A DNA stretch of 56,845 nucleotides, counting the filler, from Dugesia japonica (taxonomy: Eukaryota), in assembly GCA_001938525.1 (NCBI GenBank). It is 5 parts of 5 records of this genome, joined end to end, with 100 filler letters (N's around TTAATTAATTAA, not from the genome) between each part and the next. Parts side by side here need not be neighbours in the genome. Positions count along the whole stretch, not along the records: positions 1 to 11,194 come from MQRL01608637.1; 4 more parts are not named here. One strand, 5' to 3'. Each line of letters opens with the position of its first letter. Position 1 is the stretch's first letter. Of the stretch, positions 1-11,194 are shown one piece after another. The notes below the pieces were generated by a model, which saw nothing but the letters and a program-made list of their open reading frames with translations, was not told the origin of the DNA and did no database searches. The position numbers and the translations under genes are program-made.

Positions 1-345
1 AATTAAATACATTCAATAAAGATTCAAAGACACCAGTTTGAACATTAATTTTTAGATCATATTGTATGATCATCAATGCTTTACGCATGATTCTTTCCCA
101 ATAATCTTTAAAGTTTCTGCACAAAATTTTAAAATTATTAATATTTGTAACTAATTTACATTGAATATTATATTCTGAAGTATTACTGCGACTACCAAAC
201 TGACTTTGCTCCTGAATCATATTACAGAAATGATGGGAAGTATCTTCAGTGTATGTTGCATTACACGCATTACACTCATATTTATTAATTAGATTAGAAA
301 CAAATCCATAAGGAGTTTTAGACTAATTAATGAAAGCTTTTATAA
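1..345 (-). mobile_element. Penelope-like retroelement, decayed GIY-YIG endonuclease C-terminus
   Basis: Reverse translation KYECNACNATYTEDTSHHFCNMIQEQ...NNFKILC...ERIMRKALMIIQYDLKINVQ resembles the Penelope pattern YxCxxCxxxYIGETxRxLxxRxxEH...F.IL...EALxI...LN.Q. Bases 441-485 are an inverted copy of about 150-200. Confidence 0.7.
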
Positions 346-486
346 TTTTAAAAGACCTTCAAGATTNNNNNNNNNNNNNNNNNNNNNNNNNNNNNNNNNN
401 NNNNNNNNNNNNNNNNNNNNNNNNNNNNNNNNATAACATAAGTAGTCGCAGTATTGCAAAACATAATATTCAATGCAAATTGTTGA

Positions 487-1085
487 GGTAATTGACTCTA
501 ATTTATAGCAAAATCTGAAGCAAGAACAAATTTAAAGAAAGAATAATTATCCCTGAAATCTTGAAGTGGTATTCCACAGTTCAAATTCTTATTCAAATAT
601 CCGATATTTCGTACTATAGATTGCATATATATTGTGGCATAATTATCGTTTGTAAAATCTTGAGTATATATTTCTTGATAATCAGTGTTTTTTGTCAAGG
701 AAATAGAAATAGCATCTAGATTTTGACATGTTAAACTAAAGCTTTTATTACTGCCATTATATTGTTCTCCACTTTGAAATAATACCAGAATAAAGCTAGG
801 TTATCAACGATCACCAAATATTGGTTCCTTATAAAAACAGTGAACTATCTTTAGTAATTGCAAATGCAACGACTTCCTTGGTTCTTATTGGATAAATAGC
901 ATTTTGAATTTTTAGTCCCAATTGATGAGTAGCTAGTACTAAGGGTTCAACACGTACAGGTCTAACTATTAATTTTGAATCAAGTAATATATATATTTAG
1001 GTTCATTGGCTATATATTCCAAACGAATCTTGGAAGATATTCTTTTCAATCGAATATGAACATTGACACCTGGAAAAAGCAACTA
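487..1085 (-). pseudogene. Polinton/Maverick major capsid protein (double jelly-roll), C-terminal two-thirds, frameshifted
   Basis: LLFPGVNVHIRLKR...LLDSKLIVRPVRVEPLVLATHQLGLKIQNAIYPIRTKEVVAFAITKDSS...PSFILVLFQSGEQYNGS...DFTNDNYATIY...GIPLQDFRDNYSFFKFVLASD follows the Polinton capsid motif order (GVDVRIKL, LYVRKVKV, AKYPI, PKRIVIG, FNGS, PDF, GISxEDY.NGY.LF.FDL.PD). Includes ORF 498-698. Confidence 0.8.
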
Positions 1086-1489
1086 ATTTAAAATTATTAT
1101 CGTAAAGTGGAATTGCTATTATTGAGTAATTCTTAAAGTATATTATTGACTAATTTTTATGATTGCGATTAACAATTATTATCTAAACTTGGAATTTGTA
1201 TTATAGAATGTAATTTGAAGCTATATCTTGGCTGATTGCTAGTATTGCAAAACTATAATTAACATTGTTGGAACATTATTTGTGATCGTTAGTTGAATTT
1301 ATTGTTAAATTGTAGATTGCAATTTTGTTGAATTTAATATTATTATTATTTATTATAACTATTTACTTCTAATTTATTAATATTATTCATTGCTAATTTA
1401 AATCAACTGATTGTAATTAACATTTCCTTCTTATTATTCTGCGCCATTATCATATATGTTAAGTTACTATTTGGTAATTACCTACAACA

Positions 1490-2190
1490 TGTAAGAGAAA
1501 CCTTTAGCAACTAACATGGTGGCAGCGGTCAATACTGATACCATTACAGAAGAAATAATGCCGAAGATGTTTGCTTGAGGCGACGATTTAGAGACGTTCA
1601 TCAAGCGTTGTGAGTTATACTTTGCTGTAAAAGGTATAATACAAATAAAAGACCAGGAAAAATTAGTCGCGTGTTTAGTGGAAGAAAATTTGATAGAGTA
1701 CGCGCATACAGCAAAGAAGGCGGAAAGTTTTCAAGCACGGCTTCGACTGACCTTTAAAACAGAAAGGGATGTAATTAAAGATTTCAAGACTCTGATAAAA
1801 TACAAATGTGAAAATGAAAATCTATACATATAGTTTAAGAAGGTAAAATCATTAGTAAATACATGTTATCTAACAAGAAATTGACAGAAGAAAATATTCT
1901 AGCACAAATGTTAATCTTCCAATCAGGAAATAAAGGAGTTGAAGAGAAAATAACTTTACTCAAGATTAACAACATCAAGGATGTAAAAGAAACATTAACA
2001 TTATTTTACAAGATATAGAAAAGAGAGAGTTCAAATAATATTATGAGTTTCTTGAAAGTGCCGAAGAAAAATAGAATAAGAAACAGAAACGTGGAGGAGA
2101 ATCAGTCAACTAATAAAATATATAAAACAGAATACAGAAGAAACAGGAATCAGTGGGAGATTTGGCAAGATAATCGACAAAATGTATCCA
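1490..2190 (+). mobile_element. Gypsy-like LTR retrotransposon 5' fragment (LTR end, tRNA-Leu primer binding site, decayed gag) inserted into the Polinton
   Basis: ...AACA at 1516 is followed by TGGTGGCAGCGGT (1517-1529), complementary to the 3' end of animal tRNA-Leu. From ATG 1558: MPKMFA*GDDLETFIKRCELYFAVKGI...KLVACL, a typical gag N-terminus. Confidence 0.7.
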
Positions 2191-2224
2191 TATCATTTTA
2201 CTTAGTATTATTTATTCTTTCTGC

Positions 2225-2581
2225 TTCCTTTTGATTTAACTAAAAAAGCTCATGCAAATCTGTTGAATACAACAATCCACGTCAAAATATACTTGTAACC
2301 TTTATTGATTCTTAAATATCTAATCATTCTCCATAAATTAGCAATATCATATGTTTTATATGTTCTTGTTGGAATTCCTTTCATCATTTGCTTTTTCAAA
2401 CTGAACAGTAGTTAACTCCATAATCATTTTTCATCTTTTAATTTGATTTTTGAGTTGCTTTAATTGACTTTTCTACGACTCAAAACCCTGCCGGGTTTTT
2501 AGGATCCACCATATTGTCTTCATTACAACAATTCGATGCAAATTTCAGGTCAAAATTAGGTAATGGTTGTAATCCACCCAT
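2225..2581 (-). pseudogene. Polinton rve-family integrase, N-terminal fragment
   Basis: DPKNPAGF*VVEKSIKAT...PTRTYKTYDIANLW...INKGYKYILTWIVVFNRFA*AFLVKSK matches the Polinton integrase pattern YYDPKNPAGF...FPRRxxxVxGIDDLWQ.D...NKGYKYILTCIDVFSKFAWA.PLKSK. Truncated and frameshifted. Confidence 0.8.
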
Positions 2582-2644
2582 TCTTTATTTGAGTTAAGTC
2601 TAATTCAATTGAAAGTAATGCTATTATAAAGTCGACTATTCTTT

Positions 2645-3043
2645 ATTTGAAATGATTTAAACCTAATGCAGCAAATGCGTTTGGTAGTAATGCTGCTATA
2701 AATCTCAACTAAATTATCTAAAACATATTTTTCTAAAAGGTTTTTAACGATGTAATTAATGCGCTTTAATTAAGAATAGTTCTTTGCAATTTAATATTTA
2801 TTAAAATAATAAATAACACGTATTTGTTTATATTGATATCTATTCATCATTCTGACTTTCTTTTTGCAAGTTTTTTAATCATATTAAATTATTTCTTTTT
2901 ATTTACTCGTTGCTACTTATTTACATGATATTCTGCGATTATTTTCTCTTTTTTAGATATTATTTTATACAAAAAAGATATTTCTGACGTTTAACTACAT
3001 CATCAGTTACTTGATCAATTATAAATGTCTTTAATTTGGTCAT
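2645..3043 (-). pseudogene. Possible Polinton small basic/core protein remnant between ATPase and integrase
   Basis: Lys/Arg-rich broken frames end in ...FIAALLPNAFAALGL, resembling the QxGGF(L/I)xALLP tail of Polinton small proteins. Heavily decayed. Confidence 0.35.
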
Positions 3044-3056
3044 TTTAATGATCATT

Positions 3057-3630
3057 TTAAATATCATTTTGTTTATACACTGTGATACCATTTGAATTGA
3101 ATATATCTGTTCTCACTCTATAGTCATCAGAATATTGTTGTGTGAAATCTAGAAATATATATCCATGTGATTTCTCTGTTGCATCTTGTAAAGATTCAAT
3201 CAGAAATTGTCTGTTTGGATATAAATATTGTACGTTTAAATTGCGGGTTCTATGACTACCTCCTTGATGAAAAAGATTTTGAGTAATAAATATCACAGTA
3301 ACATCACGATGTCTCGATATCTTTGTGAATAAATTATTGAAATCACTTTCTTTATTTGCCTCCTGATACAGATGATCAACAACAATAACATCACAAGGTC
3401 TCAATTTTTTGCTCCACTTTTTATCAAAACCATTTATTATTTTACATTTAATATTAAAAAATTCAGATTAAGTTATTCCATTGTCTTCATCTACGCCCCA
3501 TTGCCAGAATATGTTTTTAAATTTCGATTTGAATAAATTTGATTTCAGTAATTTTCCTACAAACAAAGTTTTACCAGTACCCATAGGCTCAACAATTTAA
3601 TAGACTGCAATATTTCTTAATTTCTCTATC
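3057..3630 (-). pseudogene. Polinton/Maverick A32-like DNA packaging ATPase
   Basis: Walker A IVEPMGTGKTLFVGKLL, Walker B VIVVDHL, then LFTKISRHRDVTVIFITQNLF...RTRNLN...DATEKSHGYIFLD...YRVRTDIF. Has a frameshift and lacks the usual VLFKNPRD segment. Confidence 0.88.
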
Positions 3631-3714
3631 TTATTTTTAAAGCTTATTAATAATTCAGTATATGGTTTATATTTGTTTAACCGGATCAATTAAATTAATT
3701 CCATCAAAACCCCA

Positions 3715-4191
3715 ATGTTCCCCATTAATTCATAAATTGTGAAAACTAATAATAATTACAGAGTTAAAGGGTCACAAAAACTAACTAAGAAAATGATCTT
3801 TCTTATAGGTAAACCATGCCAATTCAAAGTCAAAAGTGACAAGTTTACAATTATATTCTTCAGATCTGAAAAATGTAGAATAATGGGTTGTAAGAAACCA
3901 TTGGAACCACATGATTTGAACCCCTACAATATCAAAAATTTACAAATACAATGATAAACAATTTTTATAAATATAGGAGTTTCAATTAATTTGTAGAATT
4001 TAGCAAGAATAGTCAACTGTTGGTTTGAGACATAGTTATTTCCTGCTTTAAGATTGGTTAAATATGACCCTTTATATGTAAATGTGTTCTCAACAGGAAA
4101 ACTGGTAAAAATTGGACTTAAACATTTATACTTTCAAGGATATATAAATAACATTACTTCACATTTATTAAATCTGATTGAAAGAAATTAG
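3715..4191 (+). pseudogene. TBP-fold (TATA-binding-protein-like) gene of the Polinton-like element, copy 1
   Basis: Single frame with 5 internal stops. KFTIIFFRSEKCRIMGCK resembles TBP TTALIFSSGKMVCTGAK; CWFET*LFPALRL resembles YEPELFPGLIY; VNVFSTGKLVKIGLK resembles LIFVSGKVVLTGAK. Confidence 0.8.
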
Positions 4192-5976
4192 GAAATTAAA
4201 ATACAGATGCAACACAGGCACAACTGAAGTTTCAAATTATATCAATTAAAATTTAGATATTTAATTTTCAAATCCGTAAAATATAATATGTTGAAGTTTT
4301 TTATTATCATATATATATATATATATAAATTATTTCTGTTAAAATTATAATACTAAATAATTGTTATTTGAAAAACTAATTTCATATTCTAGCTACAGAA
4401 TGGATTATATAAATGGATAATACCGACTGTTATGCTTTTTATCATTTAAATATTAATGAAATATCATATTTCCTCATGATAATTTCTTTAATTGACTATT
4501 ATGTTCATAAATATTTGCATTAAAATATGTTTTCTTGAATTTCTGGAAAGAGAGAATTTTTTTAGTCAGTATTTTTTTAAGGAGCTAAATGAGCCGGTTA
4601 TTAAAATTATACTCTTATTATTATTAATAACTTTTCTTGTGTTATTCAATCCATAGAATTTTAAAAATAAAGCATAAACCTTTAAAATTTTGTNNNNNNN
4701 NNNNNNNNNNNNNNNNNNNNNNNNNNATTATAAAATTTCTTTGCTTTTATTATTCCTTTGATAAGTTTTACAAATATACTTGCCTGTAAAATGATCCTGA
4801 TCTCGAACTGGACTAATTAAAGGTTTCTTTTAAACAAATGACATATTCTCATTTATTGTCATTGTTTATAACTTTAAAAATGAATATTTTCTATTAATTG
4901 TTTGGTTTTGAAATCTAGCCATGTCTAGATAGTCTGCTGATGTCTGATACCTTGGTAATCNNNNNNNNNNNNNNNNNNNNNNNNNNNNNNNNNNNNNNNN
5001 NNNNNNNNNNNNNNNNNNNNNNNNNNNNNNNNNNNNNNNNNNNNNNNNNNNNNNNNNNNNNNNNNNNNNNNNNNNNNNNNNNNNNNNNNNNNNNNNNNNN
5101 NNNNNNNNNNNNNNNNNNNNNNNNNNNNNNNNNNNNNNNNNNNNNNNNNNNNNNNNNNNNNNNNNNNNNNNNNNNNNNNNNNNNNNNNNNNNNNNNNNNN
5201 NNNNNNNNNNNNNNNNNNNNNNNNNNNNNNNNNNNNNNNNNNNNNNNNNNNNNNNNNNNNNNNNNNNNNNNNNNNNNNNNNNNNNNNNNNNNNNNNNNNN
5301 NNNNNNNNNNNNNNNNNNNNNNNNNNNNNNNNNNNNNNNNNNNNNNNNNNNNNNNNNNNNNNNNNNNNNNNNNNNNNNNNNNNNNNNNNNNNNNNNNNNN
5401 NNNNNNNNNNNNNNNNNNNNNNNNNNNNNNNNNNNNNNNNNNNNNNNNNNNNNNNNNNNNNNNNNNNNNNNNNNNNNNNNNNNNNNNNNNNNNNNNNNNN
5501 NNNNNNNNNNNNNNNNNNNNNNNNNNNNNNNNNNNNNNNNNNNNNNNNNNNNNNNNNNNNNNNNNNNNNNNNNNNNNNNNNNNNNNNNNNNNNNNNNNNN
5601 NNNNNNNNNNNNNNNNNNNNNNNNNNNNNNNNNNNNNNNNNNNNNNNNNNNNNNNNNNNNNNNNNNNNNNNNNNNNNNNNNNNNNNNNNNNNNNNNNNNN
5701 NNNNNNNNNNNNNNNNNNNNNNNNNNNNNNNNNNNNNNNNNNNNNNNNNNNNNNNNNNNNNNNNNNNNNNNNNNNNNNNNNNNNNNNNNNNNNNNNNNNN
5801 NNNNNNNNNNNNNNNNNNNNNNNNNNNNNNNNNNNNNNNNNNNNNNNAATGGACTTTTAATTTTAATTTACTGTTCCTTCAACAGAAATATTAAAAATAC
5901 AAAAATTATTTAACTATATTTATAATAAAAAATTTTATTAGTAAACAAAAAAACCGAATTTCAATTTACTGTTTTT

Positions 5977-6243
5977 GTATTTCAGCCGTTGCCAAGATTA
6001 ATTTTGATTTTGATCATTTGTATTCCAGCTGTTGCCAAAATTAATTTTGATTTTGATAATTTGTATTCCAGCTGTTGACAAAATTAATTTTGATTTTGAA
6101 AATCTGTATTTCGGCCGTTGCCAAAATTAATTTTGATTATTTATATTCCAGCTGTTGCCAAGATTAATTTTGATTTTGATAATTTGTATTTCGACCTCTG
6201 CCAAGATTAAGTTTAATAATTTGTATTCTAGCTGTTGCCAAGG
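5977..6243. repeat. Tandem minisatellite, about 43-bp unit, about 7 copies
   Basis: Unit GTATTCCAGCTGTTGCCAA(A/G)ATTAATTTTGATTTTGATAATTT repeated head-to-tail with substitutions and short deletions. Confidence 0.9.
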
Positions 6244-6897
6244 TTATGATTTAATTTAATTTTAAATTTTCAATTTAATTTTTGTCAATTTTCTTTATTG
6301 ATTGGAATTTTTATATTTAATATTTTTTATACATGTATGTATGTATATACACACATGTATATACATACATCTTCTTTTTAAATAAACAATTACAAACAAT
6401 CACATCACAGTAGTCGTAATGTGCTGATTTATACGCAAGATTTTTAAATTCTTTGTAATCAATCTCAAAATAAATATTTCTGGTAGATTTGTGAAAAATA
6501 CTGAAATAAGAAAACTTTCGAAATTCAATTAAAAAAAAAAAATTCAAACTAAAGAATTTTTAAAATTACCTAACATACACAATTGGAATATTAACAAAAT
6601 CTATAAAATGTAAAATAGTAAAACGATAAAAAACTAGAAATAAAGACATTATTGATAAAAAAAGATTTATTTTTTATAATTTTCATAATTTATTGATCAC
6701 ATTTGAGCTCGTCTATATTAACACACTTAAATGAAATGCATTTAATGATTGTAATAATAACAAATCAAATAATTTACTTGGATTGACTGATTTGTGGTAA
6801 ATACTACATTTTATTGTTTTGATTGTCATGAATCGTCAATATTTCAAGTAGTATATAAGCCAAGTCAACTTATTTAACTACTTTANGTGGTTCCTTT

Positions 6898-8045
6898 TGT
6901 TGGGGGAAAACCAACCAAATAGCAAACAACACACATGCACTCATACACATATATAATACACAAATATATAATACAATCAATATCCAATATTCGAGCCAAC
7001 CTAATTCGATTCAACCTACAATCCAAGAATCAATATTCGAACAACTCAATCAAAAATTTGGACTAATAATATCACCATTCAGAGAGACGTAATTTCAATC
7101 AGCCAAATTCAGAATGACCTCTACACATCAAAAATCACTAATCACCCAAAAAGAGATAAAGACAATATGGAACTCCATCTCAATAATGAATTAATGAGGT
7201 TTAATAACAGAATCAAAATTCAAGACCGTTTTGAATTAGTCAAGTAATTCCGAAACAATAAAAACGCCTCACAATTCAATTTACTTCACCATCGAAACAT
7301 ATTGTCACCCCGATTATACTATCAAACTGGTTGCTACTACAGCCTTCTGATTGATATTGAACAGCAAAAAGAAATACTTTGATTGCCAATATTTAAATTA
7401 CCTTATAAACTCGTGGTTGAAGTGAAATCCATAAAAACGGAAATAGTTGAATCTTGCCATGCAGTTCTGTATACAGGACAGAAAATTACTACCATCACTG
7501 TTAACATTATCAGCTCTAAAATACTTGGAGATTTACCCCAATATGTGCCTTTGTTCAAGCATTATGACGAAACCCTAAAAAATGAGAAGAGAAATCAACA
7601 AGAATTAAAATAGATAGCCGACCATTGCAAAAGATCGAAGAATAAAGAACCAAAATTTTTTAACTTGACCAGACATCGACAGCCCTTAGAAATATTCTCA
7701 AGACTTACATCCCCATATCCCACCTTACCGAATATCGAGGAGGAATTTAACCTTTGTATATTTAATGAACCCTGTAGTAATCAAATACCCTACACTACAT
7801 GATATGGGATGTCCATTTTTTACCCTATTTCTTACTCAAGATGCAGGTGCATCTTCTTTCGAAGGGGGAACATTTGTTGGGGAAAAACCAACCATATAAC
7901 CAACAATACACATGCATTTATATACACATATAATACAGAAACATATAATACAATCAATATCCAATATTCGAGCCAACCTAATTCGAGTCAACCTACAATC
8001 CAAGAATCAATATTCGAACAACTCAATAAAAAATTCGGACTAATA
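6898..8045 (+). mobile_element. Small LTR-like/TRIM element: 171-bp direct repeats flanking about 800 bp
   Basis: 6898-7068 and 7875-8045 are near-identical and start TGTTGGGG. A purine tract GAAGGGGGAA (7861-7870) precedes the second copy. Confidence 0.6.
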
Positions 8046-8139
8046 TTTTGTTCAAACTATCGATTATCTTGACAATCATTTGAATATTATTTTGACAATC
8101 ATTTAAATGTTATCCTGACAATCATTATTTTAAATAATC

Positions 8140-8295
8140 ATTATTTTTATTTTTAAATTTTGTTGTAAATCTTTATTTTTATTTTTAAACATTATAACTG
8201 TGTAAATTTTTATTTTTATTTTTAAACATTATAACTGTGTAAATTTTTATTTTTATTTTTAAACATTATGACTGATTTAAACGTTATAACTGATT
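8140..8295. repeat. AT-rich tandem repeat (TTTTTATTTTTAAACATTATAACTGTGTAAA-like unit, 3-4 copies)
   Basis: Directly visible repeated unit. A shorter TGACAATCATT repeat lies at 8070-8130. Confidence 0.75.
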
Positions 8296-9588
8296 TCGGT
8301 TATTAATGAATAAACATTGAAATGTGAATTTCATTATATGAAAGAAAATTGTAGTAATAAGTAAATTTTATTTTATTTATATGTAAATTTTAACATGTAT
8401 TTGCACAATTATAATTATTAATATAAACTTTATTTATATTATTTAAGGTTATATGTAATTATATGGTTTCCGTCTCTATCTAGAAATTAATATAAATAGC
8501 GGTTGAAATTTAGTTGAGACACCAATTTAAAAACCGTTCAATCGTTTAAATCTTCTTCAGATTTGCAAAGAAGGTTTAAAATATAAAACTTTAACTACTT
8601 TGTAAAATTGTTATCATTTATAATAAAGTCTACATATATAAGTGAATTTTTATTATTTTATAAGGACTACTATATAGCCTATATATTCGTTATCATTATA
8701 TTTATAGTAGCTATATTAAGGTTTATAAGTTCAATTTTTTAACATTAATATACTGGGATTATTTAATCTTAAATTTACTAAACTCACGCATTGTTTACTT
8801 ATCTTGGCCAAATCCCCCAAGGTATCTCAACACTTTGAAACTGATTAAGTAATATTTACATACTATATATAATTTTATCAATATTCTTTGTCAATGAGTT
8901 GTAGTAATAAGTCAAATTTTACTTTAATAATTTGATTCGTGAAGTCCTATGACTTTCTCAACAATTTCCAAATAACTAGAGTGAGAAATGATATAACTGT
9001 GTATAAAGAACTTTCGAAACTAAATTAAAAAAATGAAGATTCAAAATTATTATTTGAAAAAAAATTAAAAAAGAATTATTTTCAATTTAATATATAAAAT
9101 TATTATATCACAAGAATAGAAAAAATGCATATTTTATTCATAAATTATAGATTTTGTTTCATTTTATTCATATACATTTTTGTTAATAATATGTGAAAGT
9201 TTTCATGTTTTTCTTTTAATAGAAACACAGAGTTTTATATTTTAATTAAATACTCCGAATCTAACGAGGATAATAGGTTTCACAGAAAGGTTCTTTATTG
9301 ATTACTTCTTTACTTCATTTTAGAAAACTTCTGATTTTGACCAATAATATATTGATAATTATTAGTAATATAATTATGGCTATATTTAAAATTCCAATTA
9401 ACGTTTCAATAATAATGATAATAATAATATTATTAATAATTGTTAGATGAGTTTGAAGTACTCATCGAAGTATTTAATTCACAACTTAAAAATTTATTCG
9501 CAAAACAAAAACTATAACCATCATTACGTACTTGGAAATCTAGATCTTGTAATTAATTAACAATTTAAAATTAAATACTCATTTTATC

Positions 9589-9704
9589 TTTCATTAAAAT
9601 AAAGTAATAGCTTCGATCAAATTGATAAGACAATAATCGAAAAGTCAAATATATATAAAACAACAATTTAATTTGATCGAAGCTATTACTTTATTTTAAT
9701 GAAA
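9589..9704. mobile_element. Palindromic MITE-like element with perfect 35-bp inverted arms
   Basis: 9589-9623 is the exact reverse complement of 9670-9704. Related copies lie near 20829-20900 and 25220-25290. Confidence 0.7.
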
Positions 9705-10683
9705 TCTAAAATTCGATCAAAGGTTAAGTCCAACAATTATTATCACAATAATTGTAATTATAAAACTGATTTTATCATTTAACATTTTCAATTTATTAGT
9801 CATTTAAAAAAAATCCAAAATGAATTATGCTTATAAATATTTAAACTAATTCTTAATTTTTGCCTAAAAATTTAATATTTCTTATTTACATTTTTAATAA
9901 TTTAATTTATTACAAATTTCAAATTTTTTTAATTACAAAAAACTATTTTAAAAATAAATCTATAAATAACAACTCTAAATATTGAGTGGCTGTGTTATTT
10001 TCAATTCTTCCTTCGTATTTGGNNNNNNNNNNNNNNNNNNNNNNNNNNNNNNNNNNCTCCGAGCAACTGTTGTACTTTGCTCCACAAATGTTTCGCGTTA
10101 TATTTATGCTTTATTTACGCAGCTAACTTTACGAGTCTTACATGACACAATAGTGTATCATCAGTATAACATCTTCTATTTTATCATCAGGTATACATGT
10201 TCCTTCCTCTTATTCTCTATAATTGTTTTGCTTCTCTTGAATATCAACTATATTTAACATCTTTGATTTTAATTTTTCACTCTTGAGATCTTTATGTGAC
10301 ATTATACATTGTGCACATGTATCACATTTACTTCTCGACAACATAAACACATCTGTATGAAGCGTTTCATTTCTATACTTCAATTTTTTTNNNNNNNNNN
10401 NNNNNNNNNNNNNNNNNNNNNNNNNNNNNNNNNNNNNNNNNNNNNNNNNNNNNNNNNNNNNNNNNNNNNNNNNNNNNNNNNNNNNNNNNNNNNNNNNNNN
10501 NNNNNNNNNNNNNNNNNNNNNNNNNNNNNNNNNNNNNNNNNNNNNNNNNNNNNNNNNNNNNNNNNNNNNNNNNNNNNNNNNNNNNNNNNNNNNNNNNNNN
10601 NNNNNNNNNNNNNNNNNNNNNNNNNNNNNNNNNNNNNNNNNNNNNNNNNNNNNNNNNNNNNNNNNNNNNNNNNNNNNNNNNNN

Positions 10684-11133
10684 CTTACGAAGATTCATTG
10701 AAATATATTAAATTGTTGAATGATGTTCGGTGTGAAAGAAAGGAAGTTATTAATAGTTTTAATATGATTAATGATTACAATAATGATAAAAAAATTCATA
10801 GACATTTCAAAATTGGTAATAATGTGCTGGTAAAAATTGACATAAGAGATAAACAGGATAATAGAAATGGAGGAACTTATAAAAATATAAATGAAATACA
10901 CAATAATAGCTTTAAATTGAGAAATTCTGAGGTAAAAGAGATAGTTCAAAATATACGAAGGCTAAAACCATTTAAAACGAGGGAATGTGAGATGATTACA
11001 CAATCATCTCTTAGTACTCTTATAAAATAAATTATNTTTGATTGTATGTGTGTATATCAGGTATGTTGATTTATTTGTTTTAGTCCCGTATTATTATTTC
11101 ATAGATTTCCTAAGACTGCCGGATTCTAAAACA
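10684..11133 (+). mobile_element. Gypsy-like 3' end: integrase C-terminal GPY/F module, polypurine tract and 3' LTR
   Basis: RHFKIGNNVLVK...GGTYK...NSFKL...NIRRLKPF, then tract GAGGGAA, then TG at 10986 with a candidate ...AACA end at 11133. Confidence 0.65.
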
Positions 11134-11194
11134 TTATATATAGAAGCCGATGATGTCATATTGTCATAAAAATATATTTTAGAAACTCTATTTG

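What the first reader, a model, noticed from the sequence alone, without database searches (positions are those of the whole stretch)
3057..4191. Polinton-like endogenous virus carrying its own compact TBP-fold protein
Seen: an intronless frame of about 158 codons (3715-4191) lies head-to-head, under 100 bp, from the packaging ATPase, in a block that also holds Polinton integrase and capsid genes. It aligns by eye with both TBP repeats and keeps three of the four DNA-intercalating Phe equivalents (yeast F116, F190, F207). The F99 region and the helices of repeat 1 are shortened or replaced (GKPxQ). Known: TBP homologues occur in large nucleocytoviruses, while the usual Polinton core is pPolB, integrase, ATPase, protease and capsids. 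I do not know of TBP being described in Polintons, but could not search. Inference: this lineage captured and miniaturised TBP to run its own promoters or origins, or as a decoy for host TFIIA/TFIIB.
Basis: partly seen in the sequence, partly recalled or inferred. Interest (0 to 1): 0.9.

Follow-up and report, generated by a model that had tools for sequence, protein, structure and literature searches.

The report
Dead copy of Polinton-borne mini-TBP
The window holds a decayed copy of a real, widespread gene family: a 150-residue, stripped-down TATA-binding protein carried by Polinton/adintovirus-like elements. In intact relatives, most packaging and capsid genes are preceded at a fixed distance by the same unusual TATA-like box.

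Summary
The frame has five in-frame stops and no frameshift, so this copy is a pseudogene.

- **Family:** read with X at the stops, it matches a family of about 145-160-residue proteins at E 3e-51. There are 353 clusters, all from metagenome-type sources.
- **Fold:** intact members pass Pfam TBP (E 1e-13 to 1e-18). One folds at pLDDT 96.8 into a TBP saddle; the top 44 PDB matches are all TBP, TM 0.7-0.79. Repeat 2 is complete, repeat 1 has lost both helices.
- **Conserved sites:** three intercalating Phe in register, and the acidic C-terminal stirrup that binds TFIIB.
- **Linkage:** in all seven related element contexts of at least 8.9 kb, the gene sits with an A32-like ATPase, rve integrase and double-jelly-roll capsid gene. 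Protein-primed PolB or adenain protease was seen where the contig reached.
- **The window:** full-length ATPase with 2 stops, an integrase fragment and a capsid fragment.
- **New here:** TATAAAC(A) lies 30-45 nt upstream of called starts 28 times (0.7 expected). It precedes ATPase, capsid and small ORFs, not the TBP-like gene, pPolB or integrase.
- **Prior art:** Starrett et al. 2021 list "TBP" in one figure legend.

Best reading: an element-specific promoter factor. This is inferred, not shown.

The parts
3736..4191 (+). TBP-like gene of the element, pseudogene. No ATG at the aligned start.
   Evidence: counts; tblastn E 1e-30, one HSP; family HMM E 3e-51; 26 of 31 columns conserved in at least 90% of relatives are kept, 3 substituted, 2 under a stop; best relative 67.8% identical. 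Phe kept at all four Phe columns.
3057..3626 (-). A32/FtsK-type genome-packaging ATPase. Full length, one frame, 2 in-frame stops.
   Evidence: HMM of five relatives, E 7e-73, HMM 2-209 of 209; stop counts; an intact relative hits Pfam Pox_A32 at 29.2 bits, cut-off 22.8.
3627..3735 (.). Divergent intergenic region between the ATPase and the TBP-like gene. It holds a TATAAAC box on the ATPase strand at 3665-3671.
   Evidence: box position; the same box lies 33-41 nt before the ATPase start in 6 of 7 related elements.
3071..3077 (-). TATAAAC box inside the 3' end of the ATPase gene, 33 nt upstream of an ATG of a short downstream ORF.
   Evidence: The same layout occurs in relatives, for example L006 (box 35 nt before the gene that follows the ATPase) and L007 (34 nt).
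2220..2512 (-). rve-type integrase, fragment only: about the first third, in two frames. The rest is missing.
   Evidence: HMM E 7e-17, HMM 12-114 of 346; tblastn E 1e-9 to 1e-13. Relatives carry PF00665 rve, some with Chromo.
456..1139 (-). Double-jelly-roll major capsid protein gene, central and C-terminal fragment in two frames. The N-terminal ~150 codons are missing and the end runs into an N block.
   Evidence: HMM E 2e-43, HMM 153-374 of 409; an intact relative folds at pLDDT 91 and matches iridovirus, PBCV-1, Sputnik and mavirus major capsid proteins at E 1e-13 to 6e-16.

Best explanation
The window holds a decayed, rearranged remnant of a Polinton/adintovirus-like element. Its 3736-4191 frame is a pseudogene of the element lineage's own minimal TBP.

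In intact relatives the protein is about 150 residues and forms an asymmetric TBP saddle. Repeat 2 is a complete TBP repeat. Repeat 1 keeps only the strands.

My proposed mechanism in live relatives has four steps:
1. The TBP-like gene is transcribed from a promoter without the element's box, that is, by host factors ('early').
2. The protein binds the element's own TATAAAC(A) box, which sits 33-39 nt before the start codons of the ATPase, capsid and many small genes. It bends the DNA with its conserved Phe residues.
3. It recruits host TFIIB and Pol II through its conserved acidic C-terminal stirrup.
4. Lacking the repeat-1 helices, it works outside TFIID and its regulators.

This would be an early-to-late switch like that of the herpesvirus viral TBP.

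Shown: homology, fold, conserved columns, linkage to Polinton genes, and the box with its fixed spacing and gene distribution.
Inferred: that this protein, rather than host TBP, reads the box; TFIIB recruitment; the temporal order.
In the window itself nothing functions.
For: Family and fold.
- 14 relatives found with one stop-free piece; 353 with a profile, and every one of the 120 listed is PF00352.
- Pfam TBP E 1e-13 to 3e-18 with two stretches each. A PDB profile search returns only TBPs, E 1e-19 to 4e-14.
- AF2 pLDDT 96.8, pTM 0.85. Strands only at residues 2-50, then a full strand-helix-strands-helix repeat at 63-149.
- Foldseek against PDB: the top 44 are all TBP, E 3e-10, TM 0.7-0.79 over about 170 columns.

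Conserved columns in 109 members (numbering of the first sequence).
- F40 100%, F101 99%, F117 100%, F20 94%.
- Stirrup: E97 95%, P98 100%, E99 100%, P102 94%.
- In cellular TBP the two stirrup Glu make the main TFIIB contacts, and four Phe kink the box (review PMC10005294).

Linkage.
- L003, L004, L005, L006, L007, L011-14 and L015 all carry the Pox_A32-like ATPase, rve integrase and the ~410-residue capsid gene.
- pPolB was seen in L005-7 and L011-13. Adenain-like protease was seen in the two relatives tested, L003 and L005.

Box.
- 28 of 64 TATAAAC occurrences in L003-L007 lie 30-45 nt (mode 34-35) before a called start, against 0.69 expected. The next base is A in 93%.
- The pattern recurs in L011 (5 genes) and L015 (6 genes).
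- In L011 the TBP-like/Bcl-2 gene group lacks the box entirely. The exact word lies at that spacing before the TBP-like gene in only one of seven element contexts (L003), and never before pPolB or integrase.
- The window keeps boxes at the syntenic places on the element strand.

Analogue: herpesvirus BcRF1, UL87 and U58 appear among the structural matches.
Against: - No binding, expression or start-site data exist for any member.
- The box differs from a canonical TATA box mainly by C at position 7, so host TBP might read it just as well.
- Box-to-ATG spacing of about 34 nt implies almost leaderless mRNAs if the usual ~30-nt box-to-start distance holds. That is unusual for animal hosts.
- The first Phe of repeat 1 is missing in register. 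Whether F20 substitutes cannot be told from a model without DNA.
- Exact-word boxes are absent before several capsid-module genes, such as the 329-386-residue genes. Gene starts are automatic calls.
- Five of the seven contexts come from two metagenome assemblies.
- In the window the box is not enriched overall (7 found, 5 expected).
Confidence: 0.55

Rival explanations
1. The box is read by the host's own TBP. The element's TBP-like protein does something else in transcription, for example as a decoy that titrates host TFIIB (or a Brf-type factor) or occupies host TATA promoters to damp host genes.
For: The TFIIB-contact stirrup is the most conserved surface. The repeat-1 helices, which are partner surfaces on the convex side, are gone. 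The box is close to a canonical TATA box.
Against: A pure decoy would not need three invariant intercalating Phe and a conserved concave sheet. The box carries a conserved non-canonical C-A at positions 7-8. It is tightly confined to one class of element genes, and that class excludes the TBP-like gene itself.
Confidence: 0.2
2. It is an architectural DNA-bending protein for replication, integration or packaging, for example at the element's termini or origin, and not a transcription factor.
For: TBP-fold domains bend DNA sharply. In the window and in L011 the gene sits next to the packaging ATPase.
Against: Its position relative to the ATPase varies between relatives: divergent, upstream on the same strand, or after the capsid module. 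The only over-represented TATA-like word is promoter-positioned before genes. No terminal repeats carrying it were found in four loci. The conserved TFIIB-type stirrup has no role in this model.
Confidence: 0.1
3. It is a recent processed pseudogene or captured copy of the host's TBP/TRF2 that merely landed beside a Polinton remnant.
For: It is intronless, decayed, and lies in a repeat-rich region.
Against: It matches the element family at E 3e-51, while its stop-free pieces do not reach any cellular TBP even at E 10. The family has its own 150-residue architecture. It keeps synteny with Polinton genes in seven contexts. Affinity to eukaryotic, microsporidian and archaeal TBPs is equal and low.
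Confidence: 0.02
4. The in-frame stops are sense codons in a host with a variant genetic code, so the ATPase and TBP-like genes are intact.
For: Both genes have stops only and no frameshift. The genome is very AT-rich.
Against: All three stop codons occur in frame in the TBP-like gene, which also ends on one of them. The neighbouring integrase and capsid genes are truncated and frame-shifted. Three columns conserved in at least 90% of relatives are substituted. Relatives are read with the standard stops.
Confidence: 0.05

Closest known systems
Cellular TATA-binding protein core (Pfam PF00352; human, yeast, Arabidopsis and archaeal TBPs in PDB)
   Same: Two-repeat saddle: Foldseek TM 0.7-0.79, top 44 PDB hits. 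Repeat 2 aligns at sequence level, including the stirrup and both Phe. The second Phe of repeat 1 is kept.
   Different: About 150 rather than about 180 residues. Repeat 1 has no helix H1 or H2. The first Phe of repeat 1 is not in register. About 20% identity. Encoded by a mobile, virus-like element.
'TBP' gene drawn in MELD viruses with adintovirus-like PolB (Starrett et al. 2021, Virus Evol 7:veaa055, Fig. 5 legend)
   Same: A TBP homologue in a mid-size pPolB/integrase element, listed beside 'TRAF'. Locus L004 likewise has MATH/TRAF-like genes next to the TBP-like gene.
   Different: That paper gives one legend line, with no architecture, family size, promoter motif or distribution. I could not see the figure, so identity with this family is likely but unproven.
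Herpesvirus viral TBP (BcRF1 / ORF24 / UL87 family)
   Same: A virus-encoded TBP-fold protein. By established knowledge it reads a non-canonical TATT late box and brings in Pol II. It appears among the structural matches at E about 1e-3. The early-factor, late-box logic matches what is proposed here.
   Different: It is far larger (440-1000 residues) and the TBP fold is only one domain. It has no detectable sequence relation and a different box.
TBP-like proteins of giant viruses (Nucleocytoviricota)
   Same: Best viral structural matches, E 7e-9 to 1e-4, TM 0.6-0.8.
   Different: All matches are 186 residues or longer with both repeats complete. They work with a virus-encoded polymerase in many lineages. 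None is from a Polinton-like element.
Divergent cellular TBP paralogues (TRF2/TLF; Giardia TBP)
   Same: TBP folds with altered Phe sets and altered DNA preference (PMC10005294; PMC12209930 abstract).
   Different: Per those papers they lack key intercalating Phe residues and keep full-size repeats. This family keeps three Phe in register and loses helices instead.

Membership tests
TBP superfamily (PF00352 fold) | Sequence match to the TBP repeat profile above Pfam's curated cut-off | tested here: met
   Eight relatives score 30-66 bits against a cut-off of 22.9, E 3e-7 to 3e-18. The window's own stop-free pieces alone gave no hit. The window read-through matches the family HMM at E 3e-51.
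TBP superfamily (PF00352 fold) | Two tandem repeats forming one saddle | tested here: met
   AF2 pLDDT 96.8. Foldseek aligns about 170 columns to whole TBP cores, TM 0.7-0.79. hhalign of the N-half against the C-half gives E 2e-4.
TBP superfamily (PF00352 fold) | Each repeat is strand-helix-four strands-helix | tested here: not met
   Repeat 2 is complete. Repeat 1 (residues 1-58) has strands only, with no H1 or H2.
Functional TATA-box-binding TBP | Four intercalating Phe, two per repeat | tested here: inconclusive
   Three are in register: F40 100%, F101 99%, F117 100%. The first of repeat 1 is absent in register. F20 (94%) lies five residues upstream in a loop. The window copy keeps Phe in all four columns.
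Functional TATA-box-binding TBP | Acidic C-terminal stirrup that contacts TFIIB | tested here: met
   E97 95%, P98 100%, E99 100%. These align with the stirrup of E. cuniculi TBP. The role of the two Glu is taken from PMC10005294. Actual binding was not tested.
Functional TATA-box-binding TBP | Binds and bends a TATA-type duplex | not testable with these tools
   There is indirect evidence only: the TATAAAC(A) box at fixed spacing before element genes.
Polinton / Maverick / adintovirus-like element | Protein-primed family B DNA polymerase | tested here: inconclusive
   Relatives L005-7 and L011-13 carry PF03175. In the window there is only one weak tblastn hit, E 0.002, and no HMM hit. N blocks lie where it might be.
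Polinton / Maverick / adintovirus-like element | Retrovirus-like (rve) integrase | tested here: met
   The window holds a fragment, HMM E 7e-17. Relatives carry PF00665, some with a chromodomain.
Polinton / Maverick / adintovirus-like element | A32/FtsK-type packaging ATPase | tested here: met
   The window copy is full length, E 7e-73. A relative scores 29.2 bits on Pox_A32, above the cut-off.
Polinton / Maverick / adintovirus-like element | Double-jelly-roll major capsid protein | tested here: met
   The model of a relative matches iridovirus, PBCV-1, Sputnik and mavirus capsid proteins, E 6e-16 to 1e-12. The window fragment gives E 2e-43 to the family HMM.
Polinton / Maverick / adintovirus-like element | Adenain-like maturation protease | tested here: inconclusive
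   Relatives score 23-24 bits on Peptidase_C5, cut-off 21.3. Not found in the window.
Polinton / Maverick / adintovirus-like element | Terminal inverted repeats and target-site duplication | tested here: inconclusive
   No long terminal inverted repeats in L004-L007 as held, but those loci may not include both ends. None frames the remnant in the window.

The most novel reading that the evidence does not exclude
A whole lineage of Polinton/adintovirus-like elements, possibly of animals (one sublineage carries a Bcl-2 homologue), runs a self-contained two-part promoter system. One part is the smallest known TBP, a 150-residue saddle with a helix-less first repeat. The other is a dedicated TATAAACA box about 34 nt before each morphogenesis gene. 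Together they would give an early-to-late cascade that uses host TFIIB and Pol II but bypasses TFIID.
Probability: 0.4. Interest if true: 0.75.

Novelty: new variant of a known kind. Interest (0 to 1): 0.6.

Why it matters
How Polintons and adintoviruses express their genes is essentially unknown. They are usually assumed to rely wholly on host promoters. An element-encoded minimal TBP with a matching fixed-position box would make that question testable with sequence, structure and transcript data.

It would also:
- give a natural experiment on which parts of TBP are dispensable for saddle formation, since both helices of one repeat are gone;
- add a second, independent case to the herpesvirus viral-TBP strategy;
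- provide two simple markers, the compact TBP and the box, for recognising this lineage and telling live copies from dead ones in genome annotation.

For this particular window the result is more modest. It is a dead remnant that happened to point to the family.

Tried and rejected
**Searches that gave nothing**
- The window's stop-free pieces gave nothing in Pfam, PHROGs or PDB.
- A profile of the ~410-residue gene against PDB sequences gave no hit. Only the fold search identified it as a capsid protein.
- Pfam on flanking window ORFs (the gag-like piece, the 110-residue ORF at 10698-11027, and others) gave nothing above threshold.
- HMMs of the ~370-residue and ~105-residue genes, the protease, the post-protease gene and pPolB gave no hit in the window.
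- An inverted-repeat search for element termini in four loci found nothing convincing.

**Ideas rejected**
- Repeat-induced point mutation as the cause of the stops-only decay. The two dinucleotide indices (0.85 and 1.3) are the same as in intact relatives.
- A CCAAT-box promoter for the TBP-like gene. The 5-mer is not enriched; only a few 8-mer pairs are suggestive.

**Host identity**
- Literature searches for one project accession and one assembly accession found nothing. The host of the window and of the relatives stays unknown.
- No paper other than Starrett et al. mentions a TBP in Polintons or adintoviruses.

2. In my reasoning I also looked at where individual stops fall and at the residues next to them, before stopping.
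3. That gives away where some breaks lie, and I cannot delete it.
4. One search, a look-up of a relative's protein, returned four near-complete contigs (~16 kb) of what may be an animal-tropic virus-like element, since it carries a Bcl-2 homologue. I had not expected this. I made no further look-ups. After that I used L011 for two descriptive checks: a motif count and a tblastn against the window reported as outer bounds only. I also read its TBP-gene upstream. Otherwise I used those loci only through the printed gene table.
Full report
**1. What is in the window**

The piece (1-11194) is very AT-rich, about 24% G+C, and is broken by several N blocks. The N blocks were left as they are.

It has five in-frame stops (2 TAA, 2 TAG, 1 TGA) and no frameshift. 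Homology to relatives begins at 3736, and no ATG lies there. So this is not an open intronless frame. It is a pseudogene.

The two longest stop-free pieces, searched apart as required, hit nothing in Pfam, PHROGs or the PDB sequence set, even at E 10.

**2. The family**

One stop-free piece, scored against 1.84 billion representative proteins, found 14 relatives, the best at E 7e-14. The full-length ones are 136-173 residues. They pass Pfam TBP (PF00352) at 49-66 bits (cut-off 22.9) with two matched stretches each.

A profile of six of them found 353 clusters in the 5.8-billion-protein set. Among the 120 listed:
- all are PF00352;
- nearly all are 144-235 residues;
- all come from ENA, Logan, JGI or MGnify assemblies, and none from NCBI or UniRef.

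Against PDB sequences the profile finds only TBPs: microsporidian 1e-19, Sulfolobus 5e-19, yeast 8e-17, human 3e-16. Only profile positions 59-148 match, and they match either TBP repeat.

The window's frame, read with X at each stop inside a script, matches an HMM of 109 members at E 3e-51 over HMM positions 4-148. It keeps 26 of the 31 columns that are at least 90% conserved; 3 are substituted and 2 lie under stops. It is 68% identical to its best relative, with a median of 42%.

**3. Fold**

AlphaFold2 on a 109-sequence alignment gives pLDDT 96.8 and pTM 0.85.
- Residues 2-50 form four strands with a long loop (12-27) and no helices.
- Residues 63-149 form a complete TBP repeat: strand, helix 83-93, four strands, helix 133-149.

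Foldseek against PDB returns TBPs as the top 44 hits, E 3e-10 to 3e-6, TM 0.65-0.79 normalised to the query, with about 170 aligned columns. Both halves therefore superpose on the saddle.

Among predicted viral structures, the matches are giant-virus TBP-likes (E 7e-9 and weaker) and, weakly, herpesvirus BcRF1, UL87 and U58. None is from a Polinton-like element, and none is shorter than 186 residues.

hhalign of the N-half against the C-half puts residues 25-52 on 102-129 at E 2e-4. In that register:
- F40 pairs with F117, the second Phe of each repeat;
- P25 pairs with P102;
- the residue before P25 is not Phe, whereas F101 precedes P102.

A further Phe (F20, 94%) sits five residues upstream in the loop, and its role is open.

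The stirrup columns E97, P98 and E99 are 95-100% conserved. In cellular TBP the two stirrup Glu are the main TFIIB contacts, and four Phe kink the box between base pairs 1-2 and 7-8 (PMC10005294).

**4. Linkage to Polinton genes**

Seven independent contexts of 8.9-32 kb were seen: L003, L004, L005, L006, L007, L011 (with near-identical L012-14) and L015. Their shared content is as follows.

| Gene | Where seen | Evidence |
|---|---|---|
| ATPase, about 210 residues | all seven | Pox_A32, 29 bits, above cut-off |
| rve integrase | all seven | PF00665, some with a chromodomain |
| Gene of about 410 residues | all seven | fold search, see below |
| Protein-primed PolB | L005-7, L011-13 | PF03175 |
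| Adenain-like protease | L003, L005 (the two tested) | Peptidase_C5, 23-24 bits, cut-off 21.3 |

The ~410-residue protein has no sequence hit in PDB. It folds at pLDDT 91 into a double jelly roll and matches iridovirus, PBCV-1, Sputnik and mavirus major capsid proteins at E 6e-16 to 1e-12.

The lists of contig lengths for the TBP-like and capsid families share eight values.

Gene order varies between relatives. The TBP-like gene lies upstream of the ATPase on the same strand in L004-7. It lies after the capsid module in L003 and L015. It is divergent from the ATPase in L011, as in the window.

L011-14 carry a Bcl-2 homologue (PF00452) beside the TBP-like gene. Adintoviruses are reported to carry Bcl2 and IAP homologues (PMC8502044, section 3.2). 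At least this sublineage may therefore be animal-associated. From that point I fetched no more loci.

**5. State of the element in the window**

Only outer bounds are given.

| Gene | Bounds, strand | State |
|---|---|---|
| ATPase | 3057-3626, - | Full length, one frame, 2 in-frame stops |
| Integrase | 2220-2512, - | About the first third only, in two frames (at least one frameshift); the rest is missing |
| Capsid | 456-1139, - | HMM positions 153-374 of 409 only, in two frames; the end runs into an N block |

- No pPolB, protease or other capsid-module genes are detectable.
- About 1.1 kb of unrelated sequence (1140-2219) lies where about 2.9 kb of element genes would be.
- Dinucleotide indices do not indicate repeat-induced point mutation.
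- A variant genetic code is unlikely. All three stop codons occur in frame, and the neighbouring genes are truncated.

**6. A promoter-like box**

A k-mer scan of the 100 nt upstream of 70 element genes in L003-L007 found TATAAAC in 37 upstream regions, against 2.8 expected.

Of the 64 occurrences in these loci, 28 lie 30-45 nt before a called start on the same strand, with a mode of 34-35. The expectation is 0.69. The following base is A in 93% of cases.

Genes that carry the box at this spacing:
- the ATPase (6 of 7 elements) and the capsid gene (4 of 7), counting L011 and L015;
- many small ORFs;
- the two MATH/TRAF-like genes of L004, which therefore belong to the element.

The pattern recurs in L011 (5 genes) and L015 (6 genes).

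Genes that lack it:
- pPolB and integrase never have the exact word at that spacing;
- the TBP-like gene has it in only one of the seven element contexts (L003);
- in L011 the whole divergent group (Bcl-2, TBP-like and two more genes) lacks it.

In the window, the word lies on the element's strand about 45 nt before the first aligned ATPase codon. It also lies 33 nt before an ATG of the short ORF that follows the ATPase. Overall it is not enriched there (7 found, 5 expected).

**7. Interpretation**

Shown:
- a compact TBP-fold family that is a regular gene of one Polinton/adintovirus-like lineage;
- a dead copy of it in the window;
- a fixed-distance TATA-like box before one class of element genes.

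Inferred, with confidence about 0.55:
- it is made from a box-less promoter first;
- it recruits host TFIIB and Pol II through its stirrup;
- the loss of the repeat-1 helices frees it from TFIID-type partners.

The herpesvirus viral TBP is the closest working analogue, though not a relative.

Rivals:
- Host TBP reads the box and the protein is a decoy or modulator (0.2).
- It is an architectural protein for replication or packaging (0.1).
- The host uses a variant code, so the genes are intact (0.05).
- It is a host processed pseudogene (0.02, effectively refuted).

From memory of the crystal structures, which I did not check here, repeat 1 of TBP covers the 3' half of the box. If so, the odd C-A at positions 7-8 and the remodelled repeat 1 would go together. 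I give this as a lead only.

**8. Novelty**

The searchable literature holds one prior mention. Starrett et al. [quoted passage not shown] 5, which shows MELD viruses with adintovirus-like PolB from non-animal datasets. No other Polinton, Maverick or adintovirus paper mentions it.

As far as I could find, the helix-less architecture, the size of the family, and the box with its gene distribution are not described. I rate this a new variant of a known kind (virus-encoded TBP-like factors), with interest 0.6. The window's own copy is an ordinary dead remnant.

Noticed in passing
window 6896-7068 and 7873-8045: Two 173-nt direct repeats, 92% alike and 977 nt apart. They look like the LTRs of a very small LTR element or a recombined remnant.
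   Followed up: partly
window 5961-6260: A tandem array of a 43-nt unit, about 7 copies at 78-83% identity, directly after the large N block.
   Followed up: no
window 9581-9623 and 9670-9712: A 43-nt inverted repeat, 95% complementary, with 46 nt between the arms. It is hairpin-like or MITE-like.
   Followed up: no
window 1140-2219: Sequence unrelated to the element sits where the rest of the integrase and two capsid-module genes should be. On the + strand it reads by eye like a retroelement gag piece with several stops. Pfam gives only a sub-threshold DUF5564 hit.
   Followed up: partly
window 10698-11027 (+): An open 110-codon ORF beside an N block that looks by eye like the C-terminal part of a retroelement integrase. 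There is no Pfam hit above threshold.
   Followed up: partly
L011 9398-9775 (also L012-L014): A 125-residue Bcl-2 homologue (PF00452) lies between the ATPase and the TBP-like gene in contigs of about 16 kb that recur in several assemblies (24 contigs read). This hints at an animal host and at a high-copy or episomal element.
   Followed up: partly
L004 854-1858 and 5476-6447: Two MATH/TRAF-like genes each carry the TATAAAC box exactly 35 nt before the start codon. They therefore seem to be cargo of the element and not host flank. This matches the 'TRAF' label beside 'TBP' in the 2021 figure legend.
   Followed up: partly
L004 7314 and 7337; L006 5694; L007 6149 and 6166: The 8-mer CTGATTGG (an inverted CCAAT, Y-box-like) occurs singly or in pairs right next to the TBP-like gene. 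This could be a host-factor site for the box-less 'early' promoter. The 5-mer alone is not enriched.
   Followed up: partly
window 153-193 and 441-481: A 41-nt inverted repeat, 76% complementary, flanks the first N block just beyond the end of the capsid-gene fragment. Its meaning is unknown.
   Followed up: no
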